A stretch of DNA of 64,000 nucleotides, taken from positions 41,602,001-41,666,000 of the forward strand of contig CM119371.1 in assembly GCA_051294905.1 (NCBI GenBank). The letters are read 5' to 3'. A program made the translations under genes and the position numbers. The notes under the pieces are model-generated. The model saw only the letters and a program-made list of their open reading frames with translations. It was not told where the DNA came from and did no database searches. This document shows positions 39,779 to 63,409 of this stretch, piece by piece. Source of the stretch: Botryllus schlosseri (lineage: Eukaryota). Position 1 is the stretch's first letter. Each line of letters starts with the position of its first letter.

Positions 39779-40033
39779 CTCTAGTCGCTAGTTTTGAAAG
39801 TGAGTAGTTCTAGTTCTAGATCATTTCTAGTTGCGATTCTTTAATGGGCGTTAGCTCTAGTTCTGGTTCTAGTTTTAAAAAGTGTGTAGTTCTAGTTCTA
39901 GTTGCGAATTTTTAAATGTCGTTACTTCTAGCTCTGGTTACAGGTTTCGAAAAGTCTGTTCTAGTTCTAGTTCCAGGTTGTTAGTTCTAGTTCTAGTTGC
40001 GAGCTTTGCAGATTGAGCAGTTCTAGTTCTAGG

Positions 40034-41535: not shown

Positions 41536-41597
41536 ATGAGTGCTCGGCATGTCGAGAATTTGACTCAGAAAAGACAACAGGAACGGAAAGGCAAAAG
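41536..41597 (+). CDS. Putative first coding exon (MSARHVENLTQKRQQERKGK)
   Basis: ATG with an upstream in-frame stop, and donor AG|GTAACT in phase 2. It overlaps a possible retroelement remnant, so it is uncertain. Confidence 0.35.
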
Positions 41598-44500
41598 GTA
41601 ACTTGTTACGACATACACGGGGTAACGACTAACGATATAGGTACTCAAGTAGAACTAGCGGCGGAAATTTCTTCCGGTGTAGAATTGGAAGTAGCGATTT
41701 GCAAGTAAGTATAAAGGTAAGTAATGTAATGCCTAGTTTTGGATAAAAACTGAAACCTATTAGTCAGTAGAAGCAGTCATTTTGCAAAAAGTAGAACAGC
41801 TTCTTGAGGCACAGTACTTTAATGTACAATTAAATAGTATATTCATATTGAAATGAACCCGAATGTTTTCGGCTGACACTCGTCAGGGGTAATCGTCAGC
41901 AACTAGTAGAGAATTGGAAAGAGCATTGTATATCAACAATCGTATCACTAAATGTGACGTCACCAACATGAAATGTCGAATGCGAGAGCGTTCAATGTAC
42001 TATTTTTAGATGGTACACGAACTTTTTTTGTTGACACAGCCTTGGCTGGTGTATTTTGATAAAAGTCGACGACTACCCTTGACGAGTGTCAGCCGAAAAT
42101 ATTCGGGTTTACTTGGGCGATTTTTTTGACATGTCAAAATATGTCAAAATTTTGTCAAAATGGAAGCGGTAGGTCAAAAACTGTCTCAATTGTTTTCAGA
42201 GTCAAAATTTTTTGACCCATTCATTCCAGAAATGAAGATAAGTAATACAATTTTACCGTTAGGTGCGAAAACACCTAATTTGCATACGTGAGGTCAAAAT
42301 TTGGACAAAATTAGTTTTTTTTATGTCAAAAAATGTCAAACTTTTGATTTTTAGGTCAAAATATACCGTTGTTTCAGGTCATAAAAATCGCTCTACTTAT
42401 CACATTTAGAACTGTAATGTTTGATTCTTCAATTAGTATACAGTTTTGTAAAATTGCAACCACTCAAACACAGAGATGCATCGACAAAAGATGAATCGGA
42501 AACGCAGAAAATCAAAAAAGTGCCCATTTACACAAAAGTCAACGTGATCGAAAAGACCGCAAAGTTCGACAGCGTCACCCAGGAAAAGAAAACGAAATCC
42601 AAAGCCGTAACTAGAGGTCAGAACCGCTCCAAACACAATAACGAGTATATTGATTTCTAAAATTCCGAATCCGAAACAAGATCATTCAAGAATCCGAAAA
42701 ATCCGAACCGAATAACTATTTCAGAAGGATCCTAATTGCACAGCTCCGATAAGATACAGTTAGATCACATAGCCTTTACAACGACTATGATTAGCGTTAG
42801 TCATATGGCAGGGTTCACTGTCAGTGTTTAGTTATACAGCCGATGACATTATTACTCTGCTTTGTAATCAAAACTCGTTTCTGTTCACAACTACCCGAAA
42901 TCAGAAGGATATTAGGAAAACGGTACTTTTAGATAACGGTAAAGATACATCGTTTTCCACATCCTTCAAATATGTGATAATTATCTATTTACTTAATCGA
43001 ATACTTGGTGTAGCTGATTTACACCTACTAATTGAAGTAATAACGTACGTTCTCACACCATTTCACTAGCTGGTATCTGACTCATTTCCACCCATGGAAA
43101 AGCGCATGAGGGCAATTCAGTACTCGAACGACCGTTTACCAGATTTAAACCCTGCGCTAAGGTAAAAATTGATTCAATCACCCGTGGTTCCCAATGTTTT
43201 TTTTAGTTAATTTCCACCAGAAGATGCAAATCAGGTTTTGGTACCATTCATGGATAACACCCTATCCAATGGGTGAAAATGATTAAATACACCATGATCA
43301 AATATATTCAAGGTGTATGTATTCGTTACCACTCAAAGCCAGTGGTTTTTCACGCAGACACACACTTGACGTTCATTTGATCATCTCCATCCATCGGAAG
43401 GGTGTCATAACGTAAATCAGTAATAAAAATTGAAAACATGATTTACACCCTCATAATGAGTGAGAATTGTCCAATACACCACTGTTACACATCTCGTCCA
43501 GGTGTATTTATCCGTTCTTACCCATTGGAAGGGTGTAAATCAGTTCAACTGTACTTTAGACTTTAGAGAGCTGAATGTGTTGCTTACACCCTTCGAACGG
43601 TTGAAAATAAGGAAATATAACTAAAGTAAATATATCCTTGGTATGCGAGGGGTTTATTTTTCGTGTGGCATGAGCTGGTTCACTAAAATGCACCCCCAAT
43701 CCCCCAAGACATATCTTCTTAAGGTATATTTCAATATTTTCACTCATTAGGGAGTAGTGAGAACATAATTTAGTACTTGAAGGAGCCATTCACCCGGTTC
43801 ACACCCTACGTAATGGGTAAAAATCGGCAAAATACTCCTATTTCCCATAACAGTGTGTCTATTCCATTTTATTTTGCGACAATGCTGTGAACTTTAAAAG
43901 TCTTACCCGCTATCACCGTCACAACTTTCAACACGAGTTCAAGTAGAAATAGCTAGTTCTAAGTAAGAAAGTAAGCATTCTAGGCTTAATTTTTGCATAA
44001 ATATAAACTCTAAAAACAAACAAACCATAGTACGTGGTGGAGTATTTGTAAAAGTAGATGTAGTTCGTTACTGAAAGCAGGAATACTGAGTCGATACCCC
44101 AAATCGCACTGTGTTTACGCATTCTTGGAAACGGATTCTCGTTCGAATCTGACTTTCAAGCAATTGTAAAATCATATCAGACAAAATTAGCCCAAATATA
44201 TTCTGAATCATGAAAAATTCAAATATTAACACAGTAAGTTAGTACAAAATATCTCATTTTTGTATTATATTTTTGAATATGATTTTTTTCTCCGACCTGA
44301 CTGTATATACGCATCCCTGCGGATCTATTCAATCCCCGAAAACGTGGTTTTCGATGCAGTTTTCAAATCTCCCCTATTAACTTCGTCGATTTACCCGTTT
44401 TCAGACTCAAATTCGTTCAAACGACAATCCGGAAAAGTCAGCGAACGACTTTCTAAATTCGAATCGTCTGAGCGCGGGAAAAAAGCCTCAGCGAGGCCAA

Positions 44501-47500
44501 AAGGGTGAGTGAAAGCAGTCGGGGATCCCACTCGAGTTAAAATAGTAGCAGTGACTCAAAATTCTAATCAATTATGGCACCATTATTGTTTATGTTTGAA
44601 TAATACTTGTACTTGACAGGCTGTCTGTAAGTGAAAAAGTATGTCTTCGTACAGTGGTTCTCAAACTTTTTCGGACACGACCGTTTCCACTTCGATATAA
44701 ACCCTTGTTTCTTAGATTCACAAAGCATATCATGCATGCAGATATCTTTTATTTTGTGGTATCCATGGTGTTTATCGACTACTGTGGACATTTACACCAG
44801 CGATATTTACACCAGCGATATTTGCACCAGGCCGATATTCTTCATTTTTATTCCGACTTCGCGCCCCCCTTCCCCAGTTTGAGAACCACTGTCTTAGTAT
44901 AGGCTTTTGAAATGAAATGCAATTTACTATTGTAAATTTTACTTCAGATCCAATACATCAGATCTAGTCCGCAAGAAATCACTGCGTAGTGAGAAAATAT
45001 CGGACAGGATCGCAAAACTCGAAACGAAGAATGCCCAAGAAAAGTAAGTCTCTCGCTTAACTATAGTCAAATTAAAACGAAATAACGCTGTTCTACAAAG
45101 AACTTTAAGTAGAAGGAAAAGTAACCACTGCTACTACTGCGAATTGTATTATAGTACACAAAACAAATTGTCTACTTTACAAATTGTAGAGTTTAAGAAG
45201 TAATACTACGACTTGACCCACCTGCGGACGTAGAAGGAAACTTGTGCGGCCGTGACACGTAATTTAATTAGCATGCGTTAGCGGCCCTCGACGCGAAAAC
45301 TGAATTTATGAATTGACTCCCGAATTTTATAGAGATTTTAATTGGTCTTGAAATTTTCATCGCGCTGCGGCGATACAATGCTTAACTTGAATTTTTCGAT
45401 TTTAATACAGTAGCGTACTGCGCAATATGAGCCCCACAAAACAGATGCGCTGTCGAAAAATTTGGATTTTAATAAAATAGTATTCATGGTGGGCACAACT
45501 ATAATAAATAAATAAAGAATTGGTCACCGTAAATACTATTTTATTCAAATCCAAAATTTTTCGACGGCAATAACTCCGCTTCCACTGGTTGGATTTGAGC
45601 CAAATCTGGTGACCATCGTTTCTATACACAATCTAACAATTTCATTTTTATTTAATAAATATAAAACTTTCTTCTCCTGTAGCAATGCGGCTACTGGTTG
45701 GAATTGAACCAAATTTGGTGCAGGCATCAATTAGGTAACCTAGCCAGTAGAATTTGAGAAAAAAATCATTTTTGAACACCCCTCACTGACAATCCTGATG
45801 GAATGTCGAGAGATAACAGCATGCAACAAAGTAACTAATAACAATTGGCCCGCCTGAAGATGCATCATCATTTATAGCTTACCCTAAATTTCCGAAGACA
45901 CTCTCTCAATGAAATCCACCATATCGTACCCCAGTAATTATTCAAAACATGGCCACTCGTGATTTTCGTGCGTGTAGAAAGCTGGTGTGAAAAATTAGAT
46001 TAGTCCAGATTTTACCGGAAATGGACATGGACAGTTTAGCATGGGTTTTGTCGCACAGTTGCTTCACAGTCAGCGACCATGCGCTGGAATGTGGTTCTAG
46101 GCTGCATAAGAAATCGAAAAGCCAAGTCGGTTGTAGAAGTAGTAGTTTGGCCGAAAAATTGTAGAAACAGAAGTCTGAAATGACCACAAATTGGATAAGT
46201 GGACAAACCTACTTGAGTACTCTCAAAAAGTACTTCGTCGCTGACCACTTATGCTTTCTGTGAGAAACGAGCACCGAGTAATTAATGAAAGTCGTAGAAC
46301 TGTCTATCTGATAAAATCAAAAGCGAGCAATCTTTGTTTTTCAGAAAGAGCGATTCCGCGTCGTCCTCGAAAAGTGAGTTCTGATTTTGAAACGAATTCG
46401 AACTCGAGCCGAATCAGTTTTTCTTTCAGATTCTTCCGCTACTTCGAGTAGATCTTCCATATCGGACACTGTGACTTCGACCGGCAAGACATTGACCAGG
46501 TCCATACTTGCTTCTACGCTTAATGGAGTTTTTGAAACTAGTGTCGTATATTTAATAGCTCGCGTAGCACAATTTTGAGTTGCATTTTCGGAATCAGTCC
46601 GTCGCTTGTTCTCGATCAAGACCAGTGGCGGTCGCTCCGCAGGCCAATGATGCGATTGCCAGAAATCGTATGTTCGCTCGTTGCACACAAACACACGCCG
46701 TGATAGCTGATCAGTAGACAAACTTGAAAAACCGATGCAGAGTGACACCTAAGTATATCCACAGGGCTGGCTTCTTATCTTCAGAGCTCAGCAAGCTTTG
46801 GAAAGTCACAAATCTCGTATGAGAAGCAGCAAATCGGACAAAAAATCCCCAAAATCCACGGATTCGTCGAAAAAACACAAACATAAAGGAATGAAAACGG
46901 CCGAGGAAGGTGATTATTGTTCGTAATTCGGTAAAAACTGCATTATTTGGCAAAACCACGTCATTGCTGCCTCTACTCGGAGAGGCAGGCTTGTACTTTA
47001 GAATACTTTCACTTCTACTTAAATTTTCAACATATATCTTGTCACTTCTTACGCCTGCGAATTTGTACCGCGGGGAAATATGATTTTAAACTACTCGTAC
47101 TTCGTCTTAAGTTTCCTGTTTTTTGATGAAAAGGAACACTTGCGCTTGCAATTCATTTGCTAGTTGAGTAGCCATTGCGAGCGCTTCAGTACCATTATTT
47201 TCCCCAACGCAGCACAAAGCAACTCAAAAGACAAGGGCCGCGAGATGAACGTGATCATCAAAGAACTTGCTCAGATCGAACCAGGTTTGTGGCACACCCG
47301 CTTTTATACGTGTTTTTTTTTTGTGTTTAGTTACTGCTGACTTGCACACGGCTGTCGAGTCAAGACCAGGCAACGTTTTGTTTCACATGTCGGTTGGCGG
47401 CATGATCCACACAATTCTGGAATTCTCTCGTTTCAGATTCGAGAGAAGAAGAGAGAAAGGCGACTTCCAGCAGCCACGTGACTCGTGACGTCACCACTGA

Positions 47501-50500
47501 CCGTCCGCCAACCGTCGTCGACGTGGTCGTCATAGAAACCGCCGACCGCTCTCCTGCTCCCCCTGACGGATCGGAGAACGGGCTCGGTCGATCCGGAGAC
47601 AACGAAAACCGGAGCGAGAAGCCGGATTCAGATTACACTCCGGAAGAAGCGATCCACGTGAGTAGTTGCACGTATTTGAGAGAAGATTACTCGTTCTGGT
47701 TGAGAAAGTCTGAAAATCAAAATTGACTCACACCAAAGTAAAAGTAGCGATATGCGTTTCTACTCAAGTACGAGTGATCGCTTTTGGACAATAAGCCCAG
47801 TTCACCCATAGAACAAGGTCAGTGACTTCACCGAGCAGGTATCAACTACTTGGCAGTGTGGATCTTGCAGTTGATGTTCTACAGAAGTTAACGCTACACA
47901 CATGCGTTGTTTTCGTGAGTATCGAAGCGTGCGTTTGTTTTTCAGATTTTGCAAAGACTTTGCGATCAAGTCCGGACCGGCGATGAAAACGTTAAAGTCG
48001 AACAAACAGGTTCCGATATTTTACTTCTTTCATTTATTAGCGCAATACGAAATACTTTTTAGATTTTCCAAATGTTCGTGAGCAACGAATTACTGTTAGC
48101 TCTGAGCCTACTTCGGTTAGATTTTTCCTATTTGCGATACTTACTCAAGCTGTTACGAATTTAGAATATTTTCACTTGTGCTGGAAAGCTTTAGACAAAA
48201 CTAGGACTGGAAGGCTTACATATATTTACTTATGGTGCATTCGAATAGATGCACCCACAGGAAGGATGCCACAGCGCTATTTAGCACTTGAAATCCCGGT
48301 TACATGATTTACACCACGCCGCAGGGTGAGAATTGATCAATACACCCATGGCACACAACAATTTCCACACGTTAGACGGTGTAAATCAGGTCGGCTGTAC
48401 TTTCATGTATTACATAGTGTTTTTCACGCCCAAACAAAGGATGAAGCTTAGGAATCTCAACTTATGGAGAGATATCCTCAGAATAGCGAATTAAGCTATG
48501 GCTGAGAAGTATTCAACCTTTATGGTAGTAAGGTAGGAACAACGTTGCGATTACTCACTTAGCGCACGGTCGCACTCTAGCGGGCAGTATTTATGGACCA
48601 GCGGAAGGCAAAATTGATCTCAAACTTTTCCGTCTTGTGCAACATTAGACATTGATAAAACTCTCGCGGTACATTTAGGTAGAGAAAACATGCTTTCAAA
48701 AAGATCGATATTTTTAATTATATGACCGGAACATATACAATAGAAATGTGGTTGAATTGTTCATAGACACAACCGCATTTTGTATTTCATTCCTTGCATT
48801 GTTTCTCGTTCATTGCTTTTAATTACATGTGCACTGTGCACATAGCCACGGACATACCAATTTTAATACGATAACAATCGTTTTCGCAACGATCATGAAA
48901 TGGGATTTGCTTGCTGACAACTAAAACTCATCCAATTTCTTTTGAAGAAATGCCATTATACTTCAAATTCACATTTTTGTAATCAGTTAGCTGTTATTTT
49001 GCTGATAGATGGCATGATTCATAAGGATGCTATAAATGGTTTTATTGCCAATTTTAGTTATTTATTAGCGGTTTAAAAATTTTAAGTCACATATGCTACT
49101 CCAGGCCTTTTTCAAAATATTTTTGCAGCTATTTTCCAAATACCTTCCAAATACTCACACAACAGACTTGCGAGGTAGTTTCTTAAATTTGTGAACTTGC
49201 AAGGCCAACCAAAAATTTGATTAGTCTGGTCGCAACACTTGAGATGTGATGCCTAAAATATCAGTTTCGACGCATTGGCAGATCCATGAGCCAGTCACAT
49301 TTTCGTAGATCTTCGTACACTACAATAAAGCAGAATGATTTGCGATTGACTTGACAAAAGTAAAAATTTTCTACACGCTTCGTGCAACATGTTGTCACTT
49401 GATTTCTTGCTTCTAATATTGTTACACCTATGTGAAAATGAAAGAACTCCTATTGTATCAGATTGAGTCTAACTATATTCGCGATTACGAGATAAAGTGT
49501 CGTTCAGCAAATGCGACCTTGCGTTTGCGCTCGCAGAAAGACCGTCGACTATGAAACCTAGGCACAAAATCATTGACGCATGTTGGTCGATATCGATATG
49601 TTCAGGCGCCGAATAGTCCAGTCCTTGCAAACTGAGCCCAGTGATATACAGCAGGCCCGCAATCTAGTCAAGCGAAAATATTATTGAACTATGAACTTCG
49701 AAAAATTTTCGCGCCTGGCGCGGCTAGTGGTCCGCGCTATAGTTCGTTAATCGAATGTGGCCCTTTATCTGAAAAGATTGGCCACCGCTGGCCTACATCT
49801 TATGCATATAATTCTGTAAAAAGGAATAAAACGCGTCATGAGTGCCAAAATACATGGAGTAAGGACAAGAAACGTTGTCGTCATTCGCCACGGGACATCA
49901 ATCTTCCGAAAATCGGTAAATCCAATCCTAACCCATTCATTTTAAAATCTCAACTCCTAATCCAATCCAAATCCAGGTTGGACACCCCTGCTCTAGCTTG
50001 ATTCAGTCTAGATTCGCAATTTGGCCAATTTCCATTCTCGCAACAACCACGCAAATGCCAGACATCTTGCTGCTGCTATGACGCATTTCTACGCATAACG
50101 ACGAACGGCCTCTCTCGCAAACACTGCGGTTTTCAGGACATGACATCATATCCTGAATAAGCCCTGCCTTGCTACAGGGCTGGGATCGTTTCAAGCAATA
50201 CCATGCACGCGTTGAGATTTAATATGCTGTTTTTCCATAACAGCAGCGTATCTAATCAAGATTGAGAATTGGTTTCATTCTATGATATGGAATGATCATA
50301 TTTGACCAAGCCATATGCTGTCTCCGATCACCAAAATTTGCTTTTCAGGATATATTTGAGATGTATTGATCTGTCTTACAGTGCAGGTAGATGATTGTCA
50401 AGACGCAGTCAGCCAAATATCGTGTCGGTAATTTCCAAGTTGCTCGATAGCTATTAAGATGCGCCGGGCAGAAAGATGCAAATCTAGCGTTGTATCGCGA

Positions 50501-53500
50501 TGGCAGTCACTCTATGTCTATAAGATGTGAATGCGATTGTTGATATACAACGTTCTTTCCAATTCACTACTAGTTGCTGACGATTATGCCTGACGAGTGT
50601 CAACCCAAAATATTCGTTGGTATCGAATCGCAGTTGATTATCACAAGCAAGAGAATATCAAATATCTGTACAGAAATCTTGGCTCGTTTCGCATTTCGCA
50701 AAGCAGAAATTAGAATATGGCTGAAAAAGAGCATATGAGAAACATTTCACGAATTAGATTACAATTAGATTACCGGCATTTTGATTTAATTGGTCTGATC
50801 ATGCATTTGTCCAAGTCTGCTTGATAAATTATACCGTCTATGTCAGTGGTTCCCAATCTTTTTGGATGTCAAACTTATCACGAGAATTTAAAGGTAGCTA
50901 GCCCACATATAGGCTACTCCATATCGATTCTGTATCGGTTATTTAAGCATTGATAGACGCAGATCGGCGAGTGCTATCTATTGAATTAAACAGTAAATGC
51001 ATATCATTACTACAGGATACTATTGTGTCGTTGTGTGATAGCTCAACATACATTTCAGCACTTAATGCACAAGTTTGCAGGGGATTATACGCTGAGTAAT
51101 ATTGGAGTTATTGCAATTCATACTTGACTGAAAACCGTCCTTTTGGTGTTAGTCAAATTGCGTCGAAATTTCCTTCACAAAGACGATATATAAAGGTCAA
51201 TGACCAACAGAACTCAAAACGTATCATTGTCCGACGGCTGTTCTTCGATGCGTTTGACGCTTGAATTCTCTTCTTCAGAAGCGGCCTTGGACGACTTTAG
51301 ACATAACTAATATTGCTCATTTAGCATTCATATACAAAAATTGAATAGAAATGTTCATAGAAACAAACTAGAACTGTCGTCTATTATATTTTGTGGGATA
51401 TTTAGAGGTCAATCAAATCCGCAAAATGCTACCTTGGATCTGCGGTTGGGAATCACTGGTCTATACACTCAGGTCTCAGGCACTTGGTATTTTTGCTCGA
51501 TATTATGATGCAATAGTGTTGTACGCAGTATTCAAGTTCATTAACACCATTCACATATTAACGATTGTTATTATTGCCTTGAATCTACAGAAAATTTCTC
51601 TCGTGAAATTTTTAAGGTAATAAATCGTACTGCAAATGAACGTAGCATTGATAGCATTATGGTATCGAGTCGATGAAGACTAATGCGTGTATAATTGTAC
51701 AATTAGTTCAACCGCCAATGTTCATTTTTACGACGTTTCAATATGGCCAATTCAATTCTATACTATATATACGCTAGTATATAGTTTGCTACAAGCAGCA
51801 AACTCTAAATAGGTAATTATCTCAGCAGCATCACTGGCGCGTGATGCTGCTAATCCCATAGGGAGTAGGAACTGTATTGACTCCTGTAGCTTGTACTAAA
51901 TGGCGGGTTTACGACATTAATGAGCGATTATTACAGTGATACACTCTGATTTGAAATGAGATGCTCAGGGCCAACGATTAAACAGTATCTAATGTAGCTG
52001 TTGTTCAATTTACCCCTTCGTATAAGGCAGTCTTAAATGCCATTCGCAAGCATTGTGCTTTTATAGACTGGTTAGGAAGCGGTCGCTGTTAGGCAGGCAG
52101 ATAGCTCAGAACGAAGATTTTATAGGGTGTATAGAAGTGCTATCAAGTCACAGCCTTTAAGTGATAAGTTCTTTCGACTCGATTTCTTGTCGATTTTAGG
52201 TAAATTGCAATGTCGATTTCAAGTATTCAAGTTGATTTGCAGTTTTCATGTCCAATTTTCTGGTCCATATCCAAGTTTTCAGTCGAATTTTCAAGTTTGT
52301 TGCCATTTCCAGTTTTTGATCGATTTCTGGTTGAATTACAGGTTTTCAAGTAGATTTCTAGTCGATTCATAGAAGATCGATTTTGATAAATCTCAAGTCA
52401 AAAAATTTCCAAATCAAGTTTCACACATTTTCAAACAAACTCGATAAAAATATAGGTCTACTTATAATTTCGAACCAACTCGTTTGCATAGTATTGCTTA
52501 GCATTGCATAGGATATACATACCTCACCAAACTCAGTAAACTTATCGACAAGCTATTTCTAAACTATTGATGCGGCATGAGTCACGGGCTAGTTATGTAA
52601 GTAGCTGTAAGCATCAAGGTCGCATGCTACAGCATATAGACACTCTGTGCTAAAACAATGGCAGTCAATTCAAATCAATGGACTCTTAGCGACTGTAATA
52701 TGAGGCTGTATTGCTTCATAATTTAGCATACCTTATTTCCTTCCAATATCGCTTATAAAAGATCTATCTAGACATTTTGCGATACACATTTGCTGAACTA
52801 CGCTAATTTCGCGCATTGAGCAAATTTTCTGCAAAATATGCAATTAACTAAGTCAATAGCTATGCTCACCTTGATTAAAGTATATCGAAATATGACAAGT
52901 GTCTGTGGACAGAGATATGCGTGGTTATCTATTAATCACCCTGGAAATAAATAGATGAAGGGTTAGTTTTCATGGAGTTGTGATTTCCAGGTTTATTTTG
53001 AGGCTCATAATATGTTTTCAGGTGGAACATTAGATGACTTGATACTTTGTGTGTGATTCATGACTGATTTTAGGACATTGACTCGAAAAGCGTGACTCAA
53101 ACTATCTAAACACTGTAAAAGCTCGTCGTGGGTTGTAACTTGAGGTGAACTGTTTATATTTGTAACGAATTCTATACACGTGGGACCTTCACCAGCTGTT
53201 TATTGCTTGGCCTTGTCATCAGGTGAAGCGCTTTCCGTTTGTGAGTCATCAATCTGAGCTGATCCGTTGTTCCTTCGTACTTTGAACTATTCAAAGCAGT
53301 TTGAGTTTCAAGTTATGATTAGGAAAAAGCAGAAATAATTCTACTTTTGAAAGGCTTCAGGCAGATTTTGCCTATACTCGCATTATTTACTCCAGTTAAC
53401 TCACGTCAAGCTGACAGTTTTGATAATACTTAGAATTTACTTGCAGATCGTTAGTGACACTTTGCGTACATAACAATGACTTACATGAACTTGAGTAGGA

Positions 53501-56500
53501 ATTATCGGCGATACTTCTATTTATACTTAAACACTTTTCAAATATATTTTCACCAAGTTATGAATTTAGGCTACTTGTCCTTGTACTTGTATAGAAATTT
53601 AACCTTCAACTTGTTCAGGTTGTAGCTATCTGCACAGAGGCATTTTAAAAGCAAACAATGATAAAATATATATTTTTCATGTTTCAGAAAATATTTCCAA
53701 AGTAGAGCCGAGATTGAGGCCTGATTCACTTCCCATTGTCGACGTCACAAACCAAACGAATCAACAATCTTTCTCCGAAGCTCTGAGGATTTTCGGCGGT
53801 GACAGCTCCGGATCTCCGGTTAAATCGATATCCGGATCCCCCATTACCTCCACACCAGGATCTCCGGATAAATTTCCGGTGTTCACCACCAAGTCCTACC
53901 CCATTCCCGTGTCTCCACTTAAATCTCCGGATAAATCCGTATTCTCATCTCCACTTAACTCTCCGGTTAAATCCGTATCCTCATTTCCAGTTAAATCTCC
54001 GGTTAAATCCGTATCCTCATCTCCAGTTAAATCTCCGGTTAACTCCACATCTGGATCTCCGTATAAATCTCCGACTCTTTTGACCGAGTCACCCTCGATA
54101 TTCGGATATCCGGCAACGTCCCAAGATTCCATATCTCCGGTTTTTACCAAGTCTCAATCCGTAACCGCGTCTCCGGTTACATCTCCGGATCCCGTCATAC
54201 TGATTCCATCGCCTGACACCCGGATATCGATCGTAAGCTCCGGATCCGGAACTGACCACGAAATGCTGTCGTCTAGAAGCCGGCCGAGGTTCGTTTTGCA
54301 ATTTCATGTTTAAATTGATTTTTAAGATATTTACTACTTTTTAATTGATTTCCAGGCTCCAAAAGTGTTGGTTGGACGAATCCGACTCTGACTCTGTGTC
54401 GCTGTTGTCGGACGCAGCCAGCGACGCTTCTGAAGTCGATTTGGAATGGCTCGGATACGATCCGGAAGACGTGAGAGCATATGCTGATATTTCACGGCTA
54501 CTAAGTTACTTATGCCCAAAGATTATTTTTTGCTACAAGATTCGTCGTAGGCTTTCATGTTTTGTTCTTACGTAGCAGGATCGCAGTCACGTGTCCGTGG
54601 GGAGGACCGCGTCTTCTGCTCAGGAGATGATGAGAATGTGGGAGGAGAAGGCGAGGGCGCGCGACGATGACGTCAGCGGGAAACAAACCACCAACGGGCA
54701 CTCCCCTGACGTTGTGACGTCACCTAGACGCGTGGTGACGAGCGCCGAAGAATCTCAGGTTTGCGAAATCCGAGTTCGAGTCATTTTTGAGTCACGCTCA
54801 AACCCGGTCTGTTGCAGCCACGCACGGTAGGTGGCGCCAAAGCTCTCTTCGAAAACCTCTCCAAGTCCCCGAGGAAGAGTCCGCTCAGGTGAGTGCGTGT
54901 GACGTCACACACGGTGTTGGTTTGGATGTTGGCGCTCTTTTCAGAAGCCCACGAAAAAGAATCGAACTCGGATCCGAGTCTTCGAACGAATTTCAAGGTT
55001 CGGATTTTGTTTCCATTTGTTTCTCAGCGCGTAGCGTAGCGTAGTTCTCACATCATTGCGAATATGACCAATTTTGCCAATTGACCGTCTTTGTCATTTT
55101 TAGTTATCAGGAGGCTGATGTTAAGCAACAAGATCAGTGACAATAATCGCGCAAAAGTTTACCACACGCTCCGATAATTCACCTTGCTAGTTGCTTGGGC
55201 CATTTTTTATTTTCATATTTTTAGAATTATCTCTCGCGCAACATTTGGCCCGCGGCGCACCGGTTGGACGCTCCCTATCATGACATGCTTTTTGAAAAGA
55301 AAATGACCTCTCCAAACGTGAATGACCCGCAGAATTGATATTTTCAGGGCGACATCTCAAAACTATAACTATAGTAACTATAGCAATGTCATTAGAGCGT
55401 CCCTCCCTCCCTCTAAAAATGCTAATTTCCAGGAGAAAACTAACTATTGCCTTATCAGTCATCACAATCTAATCTAGGGCTTTATTGACCTCCCAAAACA
55501 CGAGGCAACCTATGTCACCCGCAATCAGGCTACTTTTCAATAACTCAAAAACTAGAGGTAGGCCTACTTCAGCGAAAGTAATGTCATTTTCAGACTCAGT
55601 GCCCATAATATACCCGTGAAAATGTCATGATTCTCGCAATAAAAATGATGTTTTCATTCAACCTAATTGCTTTGGAAAGAACTATGCTACTTTTCACTCG
55701 ATACTAAAAAGGTACTAAATTACGAATAGTACTTGTCTTGTGTCGCACTTGGAGAAGCATTTTAAACAGTCCTCAGTACTTTGTACTCAGCTCAATTCTG
55801 CAGCGGAATATGCAGGATATAGCTGGTTGTGTCTTTTTAATCGATTAGACATAGTTATAGTAGCTGTTCATTAAACAAAAGATGTCGGCTTATCGGCTGA
55901 CGAGTGTCGAAAACCATTTCCACAGAGATAGGTATAATGGTTGAGCATGTGACAAAATGGAATAATAAAGTTGAGCATGGGACACTTTAGCATGCGTCAT
56001 TTCAGCATGTGGCTTTGTAACCCCAAAACTAACTCTAACCGGAGGCAAAATCCTGAAATTATCGCTATATATATATCCTATCCGATTCCGGCTCATATTG
56101 AGAAGGGCGCTACTATATTAAAATCGAATAATGAAGTAATGTTGAATTGGACCAGTGGTTCCCAACCTGTGGTACGCGTACCACTAGTGGTACGCGAAGG
56201 TCTTCCAGGTGGTACGCGAGTAGATTCTGTTTCTTTTTTTCTGCCGAAGGGAGTTATTAGTTCAGGTGGGATTGATTTTGAATTTTTTGAAGTTTATTGA
56301 CTAGTGGTGAAAAAACGATCCCATCGGCCGTGGCTGATAATGCCTAGTTTAATGGAATTTGTTATTACTAGGGCGATTTTTTTGACATGTCGAAATGAGT
56401 CAAAATTTTGTCGAAATTGAAGCGCTAGGTACAAAAATTGCCAAAATTGTTTACAAAATCAAAATTTTATCGACCCCTCCATTTCGTTTGTAGAGTTTGC

Positions 56501-59500: not shown

Positions 59501-62500
59501 CTGAGAGCCGCCCGAGTCCCCCAAGGGGCTATGAATACTAGTGAATGAATACTAGTCAGCCTTCAGGATAACCGGACCACGACCTAACATATCGATGCCA
59601 TCTCATTTTGTCGCTTGCCATTTATATTTTCTGCTTTATTGTTCTTTCACTTGGCATGCCTCTTTTCATCGCGAAGGTCTGATTTCAAAGACTACTCCAA
59701 ATCGTTTCGACAACTTCCTGTCTTTCATTGCATCGCATGGTGTTTTGAAATGATAAAAAATAAAATTACATTGATACTGACTATTTAATCCACGTGCTCA
59801 TGTGTCGCATGCCTAATTGTCGCATTATGAAGTGGCGCAAGCTCTATAATGTCGTACGCTCATTAGGGCTGTTCAAAAATCCTTTTTTTCGGATTTCAGC
59901 CTATCACTTATCAGGTTACCCTAAAAAACGCTGCACACCAAATTTGGTTCAGTTCTAACAAGTATAAGAGTCTGCAGACGCAATTAATATTATTCATTTA
60001 TTAGGGAAAATTAAAACAAAATTCAAATTTTTCTGTCAACCCCATGAAATTGAGTTATTTGAGTTTTTCGTTTGTAATTCAATCTGTATATTTGCACAGA
60101 TCAGGAAAAACACTTGTCACTAATTTGCTAACACATCAATGAAAAAAGTGTTTCAAACTTTAGGAAGTCCGCCCCATTGACCTCCAGCTTTTTTTAAATG
60201 TTTCCACAAACCGCAAACAATCTGACAATCGAAAATAATTGGTTTAGCAAAATATTTCACCCCATCTGTAGATCTCAAACGAGGTTGGACTCAGCGGAGA
60301 ATCAGTCTGTTTGACACAAGTAGCAGTAATGATGTCAAAGTAAGCAGCTTTGCAACTACTCCGCACTGGGCTGACAAAAACTGAATAGACATAGAAGTAT
60401 CATTTAATGACAAGGTCGGGAATAATTAGGCAAGCACTACTTGACAGGGCAGGGGTGGAAGTAGTGCTATCGATTCCAAGTTGGTTCCAAGTAGAAGTAG
60501 GGAGTTCCAAGTTATGCCCAAAAACTTCAAGTCAACTAATTTTTTGAAAAAGTAGAATCGGTTCGCAAGAGGTAAGAAGTAACGATTTCAAGACTACTTG
60601 AAGCCGTGCAAAATGAATGAGGTGAGAATGCTCCAACGCCCCATTTCACCCCATGGTCGCACACAAGCAGTATCGCAGTTGTAGAAAGCTTCACCAAAAA
60701 TAACTGCTATTGGAATTGATCTCAACCTCTTATTTCCAGGCTCCAACGGCCAACCGTCCGACAACGAGGACTCTCAGATGGTTGGAAATATCCGCGCCAT
60801 GTTCGAGAACCGGAAGCAGGATAAGAAACAAACAAAGAAACAGAAAACGTGAGAAGCGTGCTTAGTGTAGTGCGACGGTGACGTCACAACAGCGCACGCG
60901 GTTGGATTCGAAACTCGGGCTCTGATTGGCGAGCGCTCGTGCGTGCACTGTTGTGACGTCATCGTCACGATTCGGATCCGGTCGTGGCCGTTCCATCTCC
61001 GGAATGCGATTTCGTCTCCGGATCGAGAATCCTGAACGAGGCGAGCTTCGTATTCACAAACTCTGCCTCTTATTCGACCTCCCGACCCGCGTGTGTGACG
61101 TAGGCCTAGCCGACAATGGTTTGTGAATACGGGGCTTGTTTCGTTGCAGGACTCTCGCGGAGATGCTCGACCGAGACCGACAGCAGTGTGACGTCACCGA
61201 CGTGGGAAGCGTGAAGGCCATGTGGCAGTCGATGGCGTAACAATCGACACAATCCCTTTACACGACATGCCATTCTCCGCAATTGTGACGCGCAATTCCT
61301 CCAGCCAACTTTTGTTGCGTTCTATGCAAAGACAATAGCAATAACAATGCTCAGTTCCAATTCTAATTCTTTTGTTTCTAACCGCGTGTAGTTGGACTAA
61401 TAAAGATGACGTAACAGACGAATATTCTTGAGAGCCGTGTAACAAGAGGCTTTAGTCAACGACTATAACAGTTGGGATGACTTTCGGTAGCCAACCACTG
61501 AATTGGTGTAGAACACTATTGTACGGATGTGCCGATTGGCATCAAACCTTCGCTGCGTGTCCCGATAGGAGTAACCTGACTGAGTAACACAAAATGCTGC
61601 TACTGTCTTTTAAACAAGTGATTTGTGGTACAGAACTTCAGAATAACGCGAAACAATAACTTCATATTGTTAATTTATTCGCTAAAAGCTTTTCGACTAA
61701 CTCTCATCAGTAGCGAACGTTAGTGATGGGGTGAATCAAATTCGAAATGTAAGAACTATTTTGTCTGTATGACGTAATAATAACAAAAACAAACAACTAG
61801 TAGACGGGCTGGATACGGTAGTAACGGTACAAAACAAACGTTACGAGTACATATTCGGTTATAAATAACCGAAAACACAACACATAACATTAATGAAATA
61901 TTCCAAGAGTGTAGAGGCGTTCCTTCTGGCGACAGAGAATCGGCTTTCGTAGCTTTATGATCGTAGATTCCAGGACCTTTAAATGAAAAAGAGAACGGCC
62001 ACGAGCAAGTATAGAAAATTGACTGTCGTTGTAATGATCAGCACAATCTGGATGGGATAAGAGATGCTGTCCAATAGCCGAATTACAAGCAGTAACTTGA
62101 TCATAATCACGCAGTGTGTCAACAGACTGCGATGAAGGAGTTTTAAGCTCAACTCAGTGCAGACAGATAGATCGATTTCCCATAGGTTGTCTGTAGCCAT
62201 TAATCACAAACGCTCATGTTTGTCGAGAGCACTTATCAAGATGGCGTTTTGTTGTGTTAATGGCGTTATGACGACACTTCACGCCGAGGGTCGAAATATA
62301 ATTCGCTCACTTACGCAAAGATGCGAAACTAGATAGTGCTAGCAGTTTCAGGTAGCTTCGATAATGGAATTGTGATAGTTTAGTGATATTTAGTGCGGAA
62401 ATGATGGAAACCAGTCTTTAGCGAAAACTTCTGATTGCTAAAAAATATGTTTTGAGATAGTCCAGGCTATGACAGTAACCCAAAATCGTTCTATCCTAAA

Positions 62501-63409
62501 TGGTAAGGTTCAAGACTACTTCGACTTATTTAAGCTCTACTTTAGGCTAATGTTACTTGGACTATTTTCAGTTCGCAAGGCAAAACTGGCCCTAGAATAG
62601 GGTTACCATACGTCCTCCTTTAGGAGGATTTGTCCGCCTTTTTCCTCGGAGGACGCCCAAATGTACTCTTTTTTGAGAATTTCCGTCAAATTGACTGTGA
62701 AATAGGAGTGAAGTACCGTAAATCAGCCCGGCAGAAAAGCTCCGGCGGGCATTTTGGGAGTCGAGCCGGAAAAATGACATCTTTTTTTAGTCAACCACCT
62801 GTAATCGTGACGGAAAAACCTGCATTTTGGGCGCTCGGCGAGAAGGTTGACTTTAGATTTTTCTCCGGAATTCTTGGTGTGAAAATTTTGAAAAACTATC
62901 CTATTTTTCCGATTCCAAAGTATGGTAACCCTACACTAGAATAAATTAATGTTTTACTACTTGATAACTATGGTGGTAACTGAGAACCTCTGCTTCTGCT
63001 TCAAGAACATTTTGACCACTTGGACTACTGACTCAAGTTATCATGAATTTAGGCTACTTCTACTTGACGGTTTTCTAGCATCTTTTCCACATCCTCGAAA
63101 ATCGCTATAATTCCACCTAACTTCAGCATAATAGTAGCATTTTTCTTCTACTTGACAGCTTTCAGTTTTGAAGCCAAACCAAGTCCTATAATATTGACAT
63201 ATCAGTAGATTATAATAATCCGTAGATTCGTTAGCGATTGTCAAAATAGATCATTTTTGATTTAAGCTATAGTTTACGTTATACAGTCAATTCTTTCAAC
63301 AACGGAACAATACTGCAGGTGAAGGTGTTAATATATTCATGAAATGCTTTTTTTATTTCGCAGCTCTGAAAGCGAACCGCACAAGAAAAAGCATCGCTCT
63401 AATGTCCAG
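41536..63409 (+). CDS. Multi-exon gene, uncharacterised Ser/Lys/Pro-rich disordered protein with repeated short helical motifs (~750 aa in the window, 3'-incomplete)
   Basis: 18 GT-AG exons chain with consistent phase and no stop: 41536-41597, 42444(or 42474)-42616, 44405-44504, 44948-45043, 46345-46373, 46430-46499, 46785-46909, 47213-47284, 47437-47657, 47946-48009, 53688-54288, 54356-54470, 54579-54758, 54818-54888, 54945-54997, 60740-60848, 61150-61236, 63364-63409. Confidence 0.8.
41857..41890 (-). ncRNA. Candidate minimal type I hammerhead ribozyme in a dispersed repeat; related copies at 42075-42108 (+), 36096-36135 (-) and 50586-50619 (+)
   Basis: The minus strand reads ACCC-CUGACGA-GUGUCAGCC-GAAA-ACAU-UC-GGGU. 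This gives an intact core, a 4-bp stem I, 1-bp stems II and III, and a UUC cleavage triplet. Confidence 0.5.
42113..42395. mobile_element. Short MITE of the TAGGGCGATTTTT family (same family as 56369-58468)
   Basis: TTGGGCGATTTTTTTGAC ... AAAAATCGCTCTA ends and GTCAAAA subterminal repeats. No TSD. Confidence 0.7.
42444..42616 (+). CDS. Exon 2 (...DASTKDE...NVIEKTAKFDS...KAVTR)
   Basis: Acceptor at 42443 or 42473, both phase 2. Donor G|GTCAGA, phase 1. Confidence 0.65.
44405..44504 (+). CDS. Exon 3 (DSNSFKRQSGKVSERLSKFESS...)
   Basis: TTTTCAG acceptor and GG|GTGAGT donor; phases 1 to 2. Confidence 0.8.
44652..44891. mobile_element. 240-bp hAT (Charlie/Buster-like) MITE
   Basis: TIRs CAGTGGTTCTCAAAC/GTTTGAGAACCACTG. 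TSD TCTTCGTA/TCTTAGTA matches 7/8. Confidence 0.9.
44948..45043 (+). CDS. Exon 4 (SNTSDLVRKKSLRSEKISDRIAKLETKNAQE)
   Basis: TTTTACTTCAG acceptor and AA|GTAAGT donor; phases 2 to 2. Confidence 0.8.
45531..45784 (-). mobile_element. Uninterrupted copy of the repeat that hosts the BEL/Pao element
   Basis: Homologous to 27075-27141 plus 30088-30320. A related copy lies at ~59865-60050. Confidence 0.65.
46345..46373 (+). CDS. Exon 5, 29-nt micro-exon (KSDSASSSK)
   Basis: TTTTTCAG acceptor and A|GTGAGT donor; phases 2 to 1. Confidence 0.7.
46430..46499 (+). CDS. Exon 6 (NSSATSSRSSISDTVTSTGKTLT)
   Basis: TTCTTTCAG acceptor. The donor AG|GTCCAT is weak; phases 1 to 2. Confidence 0.6.
46785..46909 (+). 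CDS. Exon 7 (AQQALESHKSRMRSSKSDKKSPK...)
   Basis: CTTCAG acceptor and G|GTGATT donor; phases 2 to 1. Confidence 0.75.
47213..47284 (+). CDS. Exon 8 (AQSNSKDKGREMNVIIKELAQIEP)
   Basis: CGCAG acceptor and G|GTTTGT donor; phases 1 to 1. Confidence 0.75.
47437..47657 (+). CDS. Exon 9 (DSREEERK...DYTPEEAIH)
   Basis: TTTCAG acceptor and CAC|GTGAGT donor; GC-rich; phases 1 to 0. Confidence 0.85.
47946..48009 (+). CDS. Exon 10 (ILQRLCDQVRTGDENVKVEQT)
   Basis: TTTTTTCAG acceptor and G|GTTCCG donor; phases 0 to 1. Confidence 0.75.
53688..54288 (+). CDS. Exon 11, Ser/Pro-rich with 12-aa SPxKSPxKSxSS repeats
   Basis: TGTTTCAG acceptor and AG|GTTCGT donor; 601 nt open; phases 1 to 2. Confidence 0.85.
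53912..54073 (+). repeat. 36-nt coding minisatellite (~4.5 units)
   Basis: TCTCCACTTAAATCTCCGGATAAATCCGTATTCTCA-type units. Confidence 0.85.
54356..54470 (+). CDS. Exon 12, acidic (LQKCWLDESDSDS...WLGYDPED)
   Basis: TTCCAG acceptor and GAC|GTGAGA donor; phases 2 to 0. Confidence 0.85.
54579..54758 (+). CDS. Exon 13 (DRSHVSVGRTASSAQEMMRMWEEK...)
   Basis: TAGCAG acceptor and CAG|GTTTGC donor; phases 0 to 0. Confidence 0.85.
54818..54888 (+). CDS. Exon 14 (PRTVGGAKALFENLSKSPRKSPL)
   Basis: TTGCAG acceptor and AG|GTGAGT donor; phases 0 to 2. Confidence 0.8.
54945..54997 (+). CDS. Exon 15 (SPRKRIELGSESSNEFQ)
   Basis: TTTTCAG acceptor and G|GTTCGG donor; phases 2 to 1. Confidence 0.75.
56743..58026. 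mobile_element. Inner hAT MITE (TAGAGGTGGTCA / TGACCACCTCTG)
   Basis: Perfect 8-bp TSD GTGTAGGC at 56735-56742 and 58027-58034, with TACTTCTACTTGAGTA subterminal repeats. Confidence 0.9.
58042..58172 (+). pseudogene. hAT transposase C-terminal (dimerisation) remnant
   Basis: QPTTAAVERSFSILGKLL[frameshift]SKDRHFLSENVGKYLS*YYN matches the hAT T[SA]xxVERSFS motif. Confidence 0.8.
59353..59439. repeat. 87-bp near-perfect palindrome (37-bp arms, 1 mismatch, 13-nt spacer)
   Basis: The left arm 59353-59389 is the reverse complement of 59403-59439. Confidence 0.95.
60740..60848 (+). CDS. Exon 16 (GSNGQPSDNEDSQMVGNIRAMFENRKQDKK...)
   Basis: TATTTCCAG acceptor and AC|GTGAGA donor; phases 1 to 2. Confidence 0.8.
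61150..61236 (+). CDS. Exon 17 (TLAEMLDRDRQQCDVTDVGSVKAMWQSM)
   Basis: TTGCAG acceptor and GC|GTAACA donor, phase 2. If unspliced it would stop at 61238-61240. Confidence 0.75.
62598..62933. mobile_element. 336-bp hAT MITE (TAGGGTTACCATA TIRs)
   Basis: Perfect 13-bp TIRs. TSD CCCTAGAA/CACTAGAA matches 7/8. Confidence 0.9.
63364..63409 (+). CDS. Exon 18 (SESEPHKKKHRSNVQ); the gene probably continues beyond the window
   Basis: TTTTTTTATTTCGCAG acceptor and CAG|GTAAGT donor; phases 2 to 0. Confidence 0.7.

What the first reader, a model, noticed from the sequence alone, without database searches (positions are those of the whole stretch)
42444..63409. Uncharacterised disordered protein with seven exon-encoded copies of a short amphipathic motif
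Seen after manual splicing: NVIEKTAKFDS (exon 2), KVSERLSKFES (3), KISDRIAKLET (4), SAQEMMRMWEE (13), TVGGAKALFEN (14), MVGNIRAMFEN (16) and DVGSVKAMWQS (17). Each lies on its own small exon in a low-complexity S/K/P/D backbone. Established: similar V-x-x-x-x-x-x-F-E helices occur in disordered actin-associated proteins such as frabin/FGD4 and supervillin N-termini, and Xin repeats are related in style. Inference: a multivalent cytoskeletal scaffold built by exon duplication. The six-frame ORF track misses this almost entirely.
Basis: partly seen in the sequence, partly recalled or inferred. Interest (0 to 1): 0.72.

Follow-up and report, generated by a model that had tools for sequence, protein, structure and literature searches.

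The report
Disordered actin-binding protein beside supervillin
A sea-squirt gene encodes a floppy, roughly 700-residue protein with seven short helix motifs of a recently described actin-filament-binding type, and it sits just upstream of, and is partly duplicated from, a supervillin-like gene, so it is a new member of a known kind, not a new kind.

Summary
All seven peptides lie on the + strand where stated. Each sits on its own exon of a frame-consistent chain of 14 GT-AG exons (42444-61240, 689 codons, no stop).

Spliced contigs from public runs join 48009 to 53688. That links the N-terminal and C-terminal halves.

Seven score at least 6, against 0.4 expected (0 of 2000 shuffles).

The gene is not an orphan. 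Downstream on the same strand lie exons with a gelsolin-like repeat and a villin headpiece, which is the supervillin architecture. Those exons also hold paralogous copies of the N-terminal motifs (SDRIAK, VSERL).

So the finding is either the 5' half of the ascidian supervillin gene or a tandem copy of its disordered N-terminus. An in-frame TAA at 61238 leaves this open.

Actin binding is inferred from sequence only; the complex prediction gave no verdict. Exon duplication is plausible but weakly supported.

Rating: new member of a known kind, moderate interest.

The parts
41536..41597 (+). Candidate first coding exon (ATG, 20 codons, donor AAG|GTAACT, leaves 2 bases as exon 2 requires). Unverified.
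   Evidence: the phase fits exon 2, but there is no RNA evidence
42444..42616 (+). Exon 2, motif copy 1: VIEKTAKFD at 42544-42570 (matrix score 7.6; Lys at P4 as in SHROOM3 VLEKVSKFE)
44405..44504 (+). Exon 3, motif copy 2: VSERLSKFE at 44437-44463 (score 14.8; compare neurabin-1 VSERISRFD)
44948..45043 (+). Exon 4, motif copy 3: ISDRIAKLE at 44997-45023 (score 11.0). It has a paralogue, KLSDRIAKIK, in the downstream supervillin-like gene.
46785..46909 (+). Exon 5, K/S-rich linker
47213..47284 (+). Exon 6 (72 nt, in-frame cassette, weaker signals; optional)
47437..47657 (+). Exon 7, acidic/polar linker
47946..48009 (+). Exon 8, joined to 53688 in spliced contigs of runs X1 and X17
   Evidence: joint 48006->53685, cut +3, GT..AG; X1 contig of 1029 nt with 748 nt further upstream
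53688..54288 (+). Exon 9, 200-codon S/P-rich exon with a 36-nt tandem repeat (53912-54073). It holds eight of the protein's twelve [ST]Px[KR] sites. Contigs read through the possible internal intron.
54356..54470 (+). Exon 10, acidic exon with EVDLEWLGYDPED
   Evidence: single copy in the genome
54579..54758 (+). Exon 11 (alternative in-frame donor at 54734), motif copy 4: AQEMMRMWE at 54618-54644 (score 6.9; Ala at P1, Trp at P8)
54818..54888 (+). Exon 12, motif copy 5: VGGAKALFE at 54827-54853 (score 9.2)
54945..54997 (+). Exon 13 (53 nt, after a 56-nt intron). It restores the frame between exons 12 and 14.
60272..60325 (+). Possible 54-nt in-frame cassette exon with an eighth motif, TQRRISLFD (score 11.1). 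Speculative.
60740..60848 (+). Exon 14, motif copy 6: VGNIRAMFE at 60781-60807 (score 18.1, the best; compare caldesmon VRNIKSMWE and ABRA VGNLKGRWQ)
   Evidence: single copy in the genome
61150..61240 (+). Exon 15, motif copy 7: VGSVKAMWQ at 61202-61228 (score 8.6). TAA at 61238-61240; AATAAA at 61399. A weak donor GC|GTAACA at 61236 would bypass the stop.
63364..63409 (+). It is in frame with the 61236 donor, but its membership of this transcript is unproven.

Best explanation
The region holds a real, transcribed, multi-exon ascidian gene segment. It encodes a basic, serine/lysine-rich, intrinsically disordered protein of about 700 residues.

[quoted passage not shown] Its core is V(P1)xxL(P4)xxxF(P8)E(P9), the Lifeact/ITPKA/caldesmon/FGD4 type.

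Inferred mechanism:
- Each copy folds into a short amphipathic helix on contact with F-actin.
- The P1 and P8 side chains insert into the hydrophobic cleft between actin subdomains 1 and 3, next to the D-loop of the neighbouring subunit.
- Each copy binds with micromolar affinity, so seven copies on flexible linkers give avidity. The protein could then decorate, tether or bundle filaments.
- The central exon with SPxK repeats is a likely proline-directed kinase (CDK-type) target that could tune binding.

Genomic identity: the gene belongs to the supervillin lineage. It is either the 5' half of the supervillin-like gene whose gelsolin-like and villin-headpiece exons lie 23-44 kb downstream on the same strand, or a tandem duplicate of that gene's disordered N-terminal module.

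Shown: the peptides, the exon chain, one RNA junction, the enrichment for the SFM pattern, the downstream domains and the paralogy. Inferred: actin binding, the helix, regulation, and the one-gene versus two-gene question.
For: - Exact peptide positions.
- A 14-exon GT-AG chain with one open frame of 689 codons.
- Spliced contigs join 48009 to 53688 in two runs from two studies.
- The published SFM definition and the list of 124 human instances, including FGD4, SVIL, CALD1, LIMA1, LSP1, XIRP1/2, neurabin, SORBS and ABRA.
- A matrix from 58 of those instances ranks the seven peptides as the top seven of the protein. Three fall inside the training score range (at least 10.7). Seven hits are seen against 0.40 in shuffles, 0 of 2000. 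The locus six-frame background agrees.
- The published tolerated variants are exactly those seen here: Lys at P4 (SHROOM3), Gln at P9 (USP54), Trp at P8 (CALD1, LSP1, ABRA).
- Disordered-type composition, 12 [ST]Px[KR] sites and no Pfam domain.
- Downstream on the + strand there is a Gelsolin hit (E 8e-4, 19.6 bits, below the 21-bit cut-off) at C1:41686670-41686789 and a villin headpiece (56-57 bits) at C1:41707500-41707607.
- Downstream exons carry SDRIAK, VSERL/ISERM and LSFVEKL, which are paralogous to window exons 3 and 4 and to an exon at about 71.7 kb (z 4.8 and 4.3).
- The supervillin architecture (an 830-residue disordered N-terminus with three F-actin-binding sequences, five gelsolin repeats and a headpiece) is described in PMC3842989.
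Against: - No experiment or structure prediction supports binding. The actin-peptide complex job gave no verdict.
- Four of the seven copies score below every training SFM. Copy 4 has Ala at P1 and copy 3 has Leu at P8.
- Only one of 13 junctions is seen in RNA.
- The frame ends in TAA at 61238 with AATAAA 160 nt later. The bypassing donor is poor, and I found no frame-consistent chain through the 63.4-kb and 71.7-kb exons.
- The downstream gene appears to have its own start. An ATG lies 8 nt after the acceptor at ext 76225 (window coordinate system continued past 64000; the same applies to the other 'ext' positions in this report), and that gene's exons chain in frame on their own.
- No orthologue could be retrieved, so conservation of the motifs is untested.
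- The gelsolin match is below Pfam's cut-off.
Confidence: 0.6

Rival explanations
1. The three N-terminal copies ([VI]S[ED]R[LI][SA]K[FL]E) are not actin sites. They would be counterparts of the conserved N-terminal supervillin sequences that bind myosin II heavy chain and long MLCK (first and third conserved regions of bovine SV1-174). Only the four C-terminal copies would then be actin (or calmodulin) sites.
For: - The pattern [ED]R[ILM][AS][KR] occurs in coding exons on the + strand only four times in 111 kb: in window exons 3 and 4 and in the first two exons of the downstream supervillin-like gene. Alignment gives z 4.8.
[quoted passage not shown] Key residues are K4, R6, R9, R10 and R107/Y108, R112/R113. 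These fit the ERIAR-type sequences I recall for vertebrate supervillin; that recollection is a lead, not a test.
Against: - The same three peptides score as SFMs (14.8, 11.0, 7.6).
- They closely match validated or predicted actin-binding SFMs of neurabin-1 (VSERISRFD), SORBS1 (VSSRITAFE) and SHROOM3 (VLEKVSKFE).
- The two functions are not exclusive.
Confidence: 0.3
2. The gene is an independent, lineage-specific disordered protein. Its motifs arose de novo (ex nihilo, as proposed for SFMs generally), and its position next to supervillin is coincidental.
For: - There is an in-frame TAA at 61238 with a nearby AATAAA.
- No sequence relative was found with the largest exon in 1.8 billion representatives or in the word-indexed search.
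- The paper argues that SFMs arise ex nihilo.
- Exon phases differ between motif exons.
Against: - The identical hexamer SDRIAK, together with VSERL, occurs in the same order in the window gene and in the neighbour's first exons. A second pair of similar exons (LNFVERL / LSFVEKL) follows, so three pairs are colinear.
- Within the C-terminal set, positions not required by the motif are also shared (Gly P2, Ala P6, Met/Leu P7, Asn/Ser P10), with z up to 7.7.
Confidence: 0.2
3. The C-terminal Trp/Phe-Glu copies act mainly as Ca2+-calmodulin-binding sites of the caldesmon type. They would switch the protein off actin rather than simply anchor it.
For: - Copies 4-7 resemble caldesmon VRNIKSMWE and LSP1 VASTKSRWE.
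- The SFM paper notes that caldesmon's SFM is displaced from actin by calmodulin.
Against: - No Pfam Caldesmon match was found for any exon at E up to 1.
- Nothing here tests calmodulin binding.
- This would add to the actin model, not replace it.
Confidence: 0.2
4. The repetition is a chance product of low-complexity, K/E/S-rich sequence, or of a wrong gene model.
For: Short motifs with loose positions are common. Four copies score below the published instances.
Against: - 0 of 2000 composition-preserving shuffles reach 7 hits; the mean is 0.40.
- There is a gap between the seventh (6.9) and eighth (2.5) scores.
- The open frame runs through 14 canonical exons, and one junction is seen in RNA.
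- Five of the seven listed strain differences in exon 9 fall on third codon positions, and four are synonymous.
Confidence: 0.03

Closest known systems
[quoted passage not shown]
   Same: - Nine-residue core with hydrophobic P1 and aromatic P8, acidic or amide P9, set in disordered sequence.
- All seven peptides are the top matrix hits.
- VGNIRAMFE and VSERLSKFE score like published instances.
- Published variants (Lys P4, Gln P9, Trp P8) recur here.
- Proteins with several SFMs are known (XIRP1/2, PLEKHG3, neurabin, SORBS, SSH2).
   Different: - This is a tunicate protein. The paper analysed human proteins and found most validated motifs to be of vertebrate age.
- Seven (perhaps eight) copies lie on separate exons.
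- The copies fall into two sub-types that share non-required positions, which hints at duplication. The paper favours ex nihilo origin.
- Binding is untested.
Supervillin (SVIL/archvillin)
   Same: - Long disordered N-terminal region with several F-actin-binding sequences.
- Supervillin is itself on the SFM list.
- A gelsolin-like repeat and a villin headpiece lie downstream on the same strand.
- Total predicted size, if joined, is about 1900 residues.
- ERIAR-like sequences occur near the N-terminus.
   Different: - Continuity with the gelsolin/headpiece exons is not shown (TAA at 61238).
- The downstream gene seems to have its own start and its own copies of the N-terminal motifs.
- The gelsolin hit is below Pfam's cut-off.
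- No vertebrate supervillin sequence was available for alignment.
Caldesmon / LSP1 C-terminal actin- and calmodulin-binding sites
   Same: Several spaced copies of V-x-x-x-[KR]-x-M-[WF]-E in a basic disordered C-terminus.
   Different: - No Pfam Caldesmon match.
- No E/K-rich helical spacer.
- No myosin- or tropomyosin-binding regions identified.
Xin repeats (XIRP1/2)
   Same: Many repeated actin-binding units whose core fits the SFM (for example VGTARWLFE).
   Different: - Xin units are 16 residues, GDV(K/Q/R/S)xx(R/K/T)WLFET(Q/R/K/T)PLD, in tandem arrays of 13-31 (PMC2478706).
- Here there is no WLFET core and no PLD tail.
- The copies are tens to hundreds of residues apart and on separate exons.
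- Xin was reported absent from Ciona and amphioxus.
Neurabin/spinophilin N-terminal F-actin-binding domain
   Same: Three SFMs within about 90 residues at the N-terminus. Neurabin-1 VSERISRFD is nearly identical to copy 2, VSERLSKFE.
   Different: No PDZ, PP1-binding or coiled-coil/SAM parts are seen in the gene model. The likeness is confined to the motif.

Membership tests
[quoted passage not shown] | Core V(P1)xxL(P4)xxxF(P8)E(P9) with conservative substitutions; P1 and P8 essential | tested here: met
   A matrix from 58 published human SFMs gives scores of 18.1, 14.8, 11.0, 9.2, 8.6, 7.6 and 6.9 for the seven peptides. The next best 9-mer scores 2.5, and the training minimum is 10.7. Seven hits against 0.40 in shuffles, 0 of 2000. 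So three copies score within the training range and four score below it.
[quoted passage not shown] | Located in an intrinsically disordered region | tested here: met
   Judged by composition only: S 16.5%, K 9.7%, P 7.1%, GRAVY -0.94, no Pfam domain in any exon. The peptide pLDDT was 47-49 in the complex job. No dedicated disorder predictor was available.
[quoted passage not shown] | Predicted or observed helix docked in the actin SD1-SD3 cleft (the paper required ipTM of at least 0.6 in the ITPKA orientation) | tested here: inconclusive
   The exon-14 peptide with a fish alpha-cardiac actin gave score 0.03 and 'no verdict'. A different predictor was used, without alignments.
[quoted passage not shown] | F-actin co-sedimentation or co-localisation that is lost on P1/P8 mutation | not testable with these tools
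   Bench assay.
Supervillin (SVIL) | Five gelsolin-like repeats and a C-terminal villin headpiece in the same polypeptide | tested here: inconclusive
   The headpiece is at C1:41707500-41707607 (+), 56-57 bits. One gelsolin-like exon is at C1:41686670-41686789 (+), 19.6 bits, below the cut-off of 21. Both lie downstream on the same strand, but no junction to the window's exons is shown, and there is an in-frame TAA at 61238.
Supervillin (SVIL) | Long disordered N-terminus carrying F-actin-binding sequences (bovine SV 171-830) and conserved myosin II/L-MLCK-binding sequences (SV 1-174) | tested here: inconclusive
   The disordered region with SFM-type motifs is present. ERIAR-like [ED]R[IL][AS]K sequences are shared with the neighbour's first exons. 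The link to vertebrate supervillin rests on residue numbers in PMC3842989 and on my memory of the sequence, not on an alignment.
Xin repeat proteins (Pfam PF08043) | 16-residue unit GDV(K/Q/R/S)xx(R/K/T)WLFET(Q/R/K/T)PLD in tandem arrays of 13 or more | tested here: not met
   Consensus taken from PMC2478706. No copy has WLFET or PLD, and the copies are dispersed on separate exons. No Pfam hit at E up to 1.
Caldesmon/LSP1 (Pfam PF02029) | Match to the Caldesmon family profile | tested here: not met
   No hit at E up to 1 for the nine exon-bearing frames scanned, which include all four C-terminal motif exons. This is a weak test, because single exons are short and the spliced protein could not be submitted.
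ABRA/STARS | C-terminal Costars domain (PF14705) after the VGNLKGRWQ-type motif | tested here: not met
   The genome's only two Costars matches are on contigs C16 and C14, not at this locus.

The most novel reading that the evidence does not exclude
A tandem partial duplication of the supervillin 5' region produced, in an ascidian, a stand-alone (or N-terminally appended) array of seven to eight exon-borne actin-binding helices. On this reading, SFMs can multiply by duplication as well as arise ex nihilo. It would also mean that supervillin's conserved N-terminal 'myosin-binding' ERIAR sequences and the SFM belong to the same helix class.
Probability: 0.2. Interest if true: 0.55.

Novelty: new member of a known kind. 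Interest (0 to 1): 0.4.

Why it matters
The SFM was defined in 2026 from human proteins. It was reported to be mostly of vertebrate age and to arise de novo, without motif-bearing exons.

An ascidian protein with seven such motifs would extend the class to tunicates. Here each motif sits on its own exon, the copies fall into two self-similar sub-types, and the gene is tied by paralogy and position to supervillin. Together these offer a natural case for testing three things:
- whether SFM arrays can grow by duplication;
- how multivalency of weak actin-binding helices works;
- how supervillin's disordered N-terminus evolved.

For genome annotation, it shows that this locus needs transcript evidence to decide between one long supervillin gene and two genes.

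Tried and rejected
Sequence and family searches that found nothing useful:
- Full HMMER search of 1.84 billion representatives with the 236-residue frame of the large exon. Only five low-complexity S/P-repeat hits came back, none a relative.
- Word-indexed protein search with the same frame, and later with the gelsolin-like exon. Neither gave a hit; the length window of that tool excludes full-length relatives.
- Pfam on nine exon-bearing frames: nothing at E up to 1 that is credible.
- Rfam on the whole window: nothing.
- ESM Atlas with the exon-14 peptide: no usable hit. A second Atlas query failed on my frame error.
- PDB sequence searches with exons 14 and 3: only designed helical repeats at E of about 1-2.

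Complex prediction: exon-14 peptide (35 residues) with a fish alpha-cardiac actin (P0093 residues 16-392, obtained through an Arp1/actin-exon profile). The result was 'no verdict', score 0.03, and no controls were run. This counts neither for nor against binding. The genome's only intronless actin-family genes are Arp1, Arp3 and BAF53-like, so its own conventional actin could not be submitted unaltered.

Identities rejected: an ABRA/STARS identity (Costars domains lie elsewhere) and a Xin identity.

Gene-model attempts that failed:
- An automatic dynamic-programming model for 45-54 kb inserted junk exons. It was replaced by the RNA joint.
- Chaining the window gene to the downstream exons in frame did not give a clean path through the 63.4-kb and 71.7-kb exons.

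Notes of the scan for supervillin, gelsolin or headpiece: none.

Full report
**What is in the sequence.** They lie at 42541, 44434, 44994, 54615, 54824, 60778 and 61199. The window has about 40% G+C, no N, no Rfam match, and several satellite arrays. Earlier notes of the scan describe this genome as a sea-squirt genome with a spliced leader. The assembly has 495 Mb in 219 contigs, and the window is C1:41602001-41666000.

**Gene model.** I rebuilt the splicing from splice signals and reading frames.
- Exons 2, 3 and 4 (42444-42616, 44405-44504, 44948-45043) join in frame.
- The C-terminal group also joins in frame: 53688-54288, 54356-54470, 54579-54758 (or -54734), 54818-54888, 54945-54997, 60740-60848 and 61150-61240. 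This worked once I recognised a 53-nt exon behind a 56-nt intron.
- In the middle, 46785-46909, 47213-47284 (optional, 72 nt) and 47437-47657 fit. No in-frame acceptor of the large exon could follow 47657 directly.
- The one reads call was therefore spent on 47850-53849. Contigs of runs X1 and X17, from two studies, skip 48006->53685 (cut +3, GT..AG). This defines a 64-nt exon, 47946-48009, whose length is exactly what the frame needs.
- The X1 contig is 1029 nt long and continues 748 nt upstream of 47946. That agrees with the summed length of exons 3-7 plus part of exon 2. It also reads straight through 53685-53849, so the large exon is not split.
- The final model has 14 exons, all with CAG acceptors, 2071 nt and 689 codons without a stop.
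- Exon 2 needs two bases from an upstream exon. 41536-41597 (ATG, 20 codons) fits but is unverified.
- Reads of a 2026 RNA run cover exon 9 with many differences from the window. Of the seven differences listed, five are at third codon positions and four are synonymous.
- Exons 10 and 14 are single-copy in the genome.

**The protein.** It is basic (pI 9.25), hydrophilic (GRAVY -0.94) and rich in S, K, V, D, P, E and T. It has 26 S/T-P sites, 12 of which are [ST]Px[KR], mostly in the tandem-repeat exon 9. No exon matches a Pfam family.

**What the motif is.** A literature search found Paraschiakos et al., Nat Cell Biol 2026 (PMC13364712). [quoted passage not shown] It shows that P1 and P8 are essential and that peptide affinities are 2-12 uM. 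It lists 124 instances in 103 human proteins. The list includes FGD4/frabin (validated), supervillin, caldesmon (VRNIKSMWE), LSP1, LIMA1, the Xin repeats, neurabin-1 (VSERISRFD), SORBS1/2, SHROOM3 (VLEKVSKFE) and ABRA (VGNLKGRWQ).

I built a log-odds matrix from 58 of the published 9-mers and scanned my 689-residue model.
The next best scores 2.5.
- Composition-preserving shuffles give 0.40 hits at or above 6, and none of 2000 gives seven.
- The six-frame background of 71 kb gives about the same rate.
- Three copies score within the range of the published motifs, and four score below it.
- Their departures (Lys/Arg at P4, Gln at P9, Trp at P8) are ones the paper documents in binding peptides.

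**Test of binding.** The genome's conventional actins are split by introns; only Arp1, Arp3 and a BAF53-like gene are intronless. I therefore obtained a fish alpha-cardiac actin through a profile of Arp1 plus actin exons. I submitted it with the exon-14 peptide. The job returned 'no verdict' (score 0.03), which I do not count either way.

**Duplication.** Among all exon pairs, the most similar are the C-terminal motif exons (z 7.7, 6.2, 3.9), followed by the N-terminal ones (3.3, 2.9). The alignments cover only 10-14 residues. The C-terminal copies share Gly P2, Ala P6, Met/Leu P7 and Asn/Ser P10, positions the motif does not demand. The N-terminal copies share an acidic P3, a basic P4 and Lys P7. 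Exon phases differ. Duplication is plausible but not shown.

**The neighbourhood changes the identity.** On the same strand I found:
- an exon with a gelsolin-type first repeat (Pfam Gelsolin E 8e-4, 19.6 bits, just under the cut-off);
- several further frames that read like gelsolin-family exons but gave no Pfam match;
- a villin headpiece at C1:41707500-41707607 that ends the frame (56-57 bits).

The genome has only one other headpiece, in a gene with strong gelsolin repeats at C1:37.94 Mb, which is villin-like. A headpiece behind divergent gelsolin repeats and a disordered N-terminus is the supervillin architecture, as summarised in PMC3842989.

The first exons of this downstream gene read MSESISERMSRL......SVSERLNSLK... 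and ...KLSDRIAKIKEG.... They chain in frame with one another up to the gelsolin exon.

The pattern [ED]R[ILM][AS][KR] occurs in coding exons on the + strand of the 111 kb only in window exons 3 and 4 and in these two downstream exons. Exon 4 aligns to the downstream exon with z 4.8, 0 of 400 shuffles. An exon at about 71.7 kb (LNFVERLKFFKQLS) aligns to the downstream LSFVEKLSKKG exon with z 4.3. The window gene and the supervillin-like gene therefore share a colinear set of N-terminal modules.

**One gene or two.**

For one gene:
- Same strand and close spacing.
- A summed size near that of vertebrate supervillin.
- The donor at 61236 is phase-compatible with both the 63364 and the ext 76225 acceptors.

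For two genes:
- The TAA at 61238 sits behind a poor donor, with AATAAA at 61399.
- An ATG lies 8 nt after the ext 76225 acceptor.
- No clean in-frame path runs through the 63.4-kb and 71.7-kb exons.

I could not decide this without further reads, and I put the odds near even.

**Function.** In bovine supervillin the conserved sequences of residues 1-174 bind myosin II and L-MLCK. The mutated residues are K4, R6, R9, R10 and R107/Y108, R112/R113. Three F-actin-binding sequences lie in residues 171-830. The three N-terminal copies may therefore be myosin-binding counterparts, not actin sites, or both. The four C-terminal copies resemble the caldesmon/LSP1/ABRA type and are the better actin candidates.

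**Verdict.** The interpretation as a multivalent actin-binding scaffold is well supported at the sequence level but untested. The protein is a new, tunicate member of a known motif class and belongs to the supervillin lineage. It is not an orphan.

Noticed in passing
C1:41678225-41707607 (+), i.e. 76-106 kb in the window's coordinate system continued (loci L019-L022): A supervillin-like gene lies here. Its exons begin MSESISERMSRL, chain in frame to a gelsolin-type exon, and end in a villin headpiece (Pfam VHP, 56 bits).
   Followed up: partly
window 60272-60325: An open frame in the intron between exons 13 and 14 holds TQRRISLFD (SFM matrix score 11.1). AG and GT sites flank it so that it forms a 54-nt in-frame cassette, possibly an eighth, alternatively spliced copy.
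   Followed up: partly
window 54356-54470: Exon 10 is strongly acidic (pI 4.1) and holds SEVDLEWLGYDPEDD, a tryptophan in an acidic run. By recollection it looks like the tryptophan-acidic motifs that bind kinesin light chain. Not tested.
   Followed up: no
window 53114-53144 joined to 53688: One low-depth contig of run X16 joins 53144 (GT) to the exon-9 acceptor. The upstream piece has a stop in frame, so this could be an alternative non-coding first exon giving a C-terminal-only product.
   Followed up: partly
window 49050-49850 and 50450-50850: Two stretches inside the 5.7-kb intron have very high summed contig depth in all runs, many loose ends and reads at 90-95% identity. They look like dispersed, transcribed repeats.
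   Followed up: no
window 1-28000: A unit of about 9.56 kb is repeated in tandem; the first two copies are 99.8-100% identical at an offset of 9561. Three identical copies of a 126-residue frame that looks RNase H-like (by eye, not tested) lie at 1087, 10648 and 20177.
   Followed up: partly
window 27962-29368: Two adjacent + strand frames (258 and 158 residues) may be the remains of a retroelement gag gene. One looks coiled-coil-like and the other has a Cys/His-rich segment (my reading; no family search run).
   Followed up: no
window 38400-41000: Satellite arrays with periods 150, 71, 36-37 and 5 (AGTCA) lie just upstream of the candidate first exon. Their translation gives spurious SFM-like hits (VLVLVASFE).
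   Followed up: no
window 53650-53849 (run X23): Reads of a 2026 RNA run labelled as the same species differ from the window at many sites; 344 of 449 laid reads are only 90-95% alike. This suggests a divergent strain, haplotype or cryptic species.
   Followed up: no
L003 (C3:19593232-19594470), L004 (C4:19102656-19103756), L005 (C12:548933-550138): The BAF53-like, Arp1 (centractin) and Arp3 genes are each a single open frame without introns. The conventional actins are split into three or more exons.
   Followed up: no
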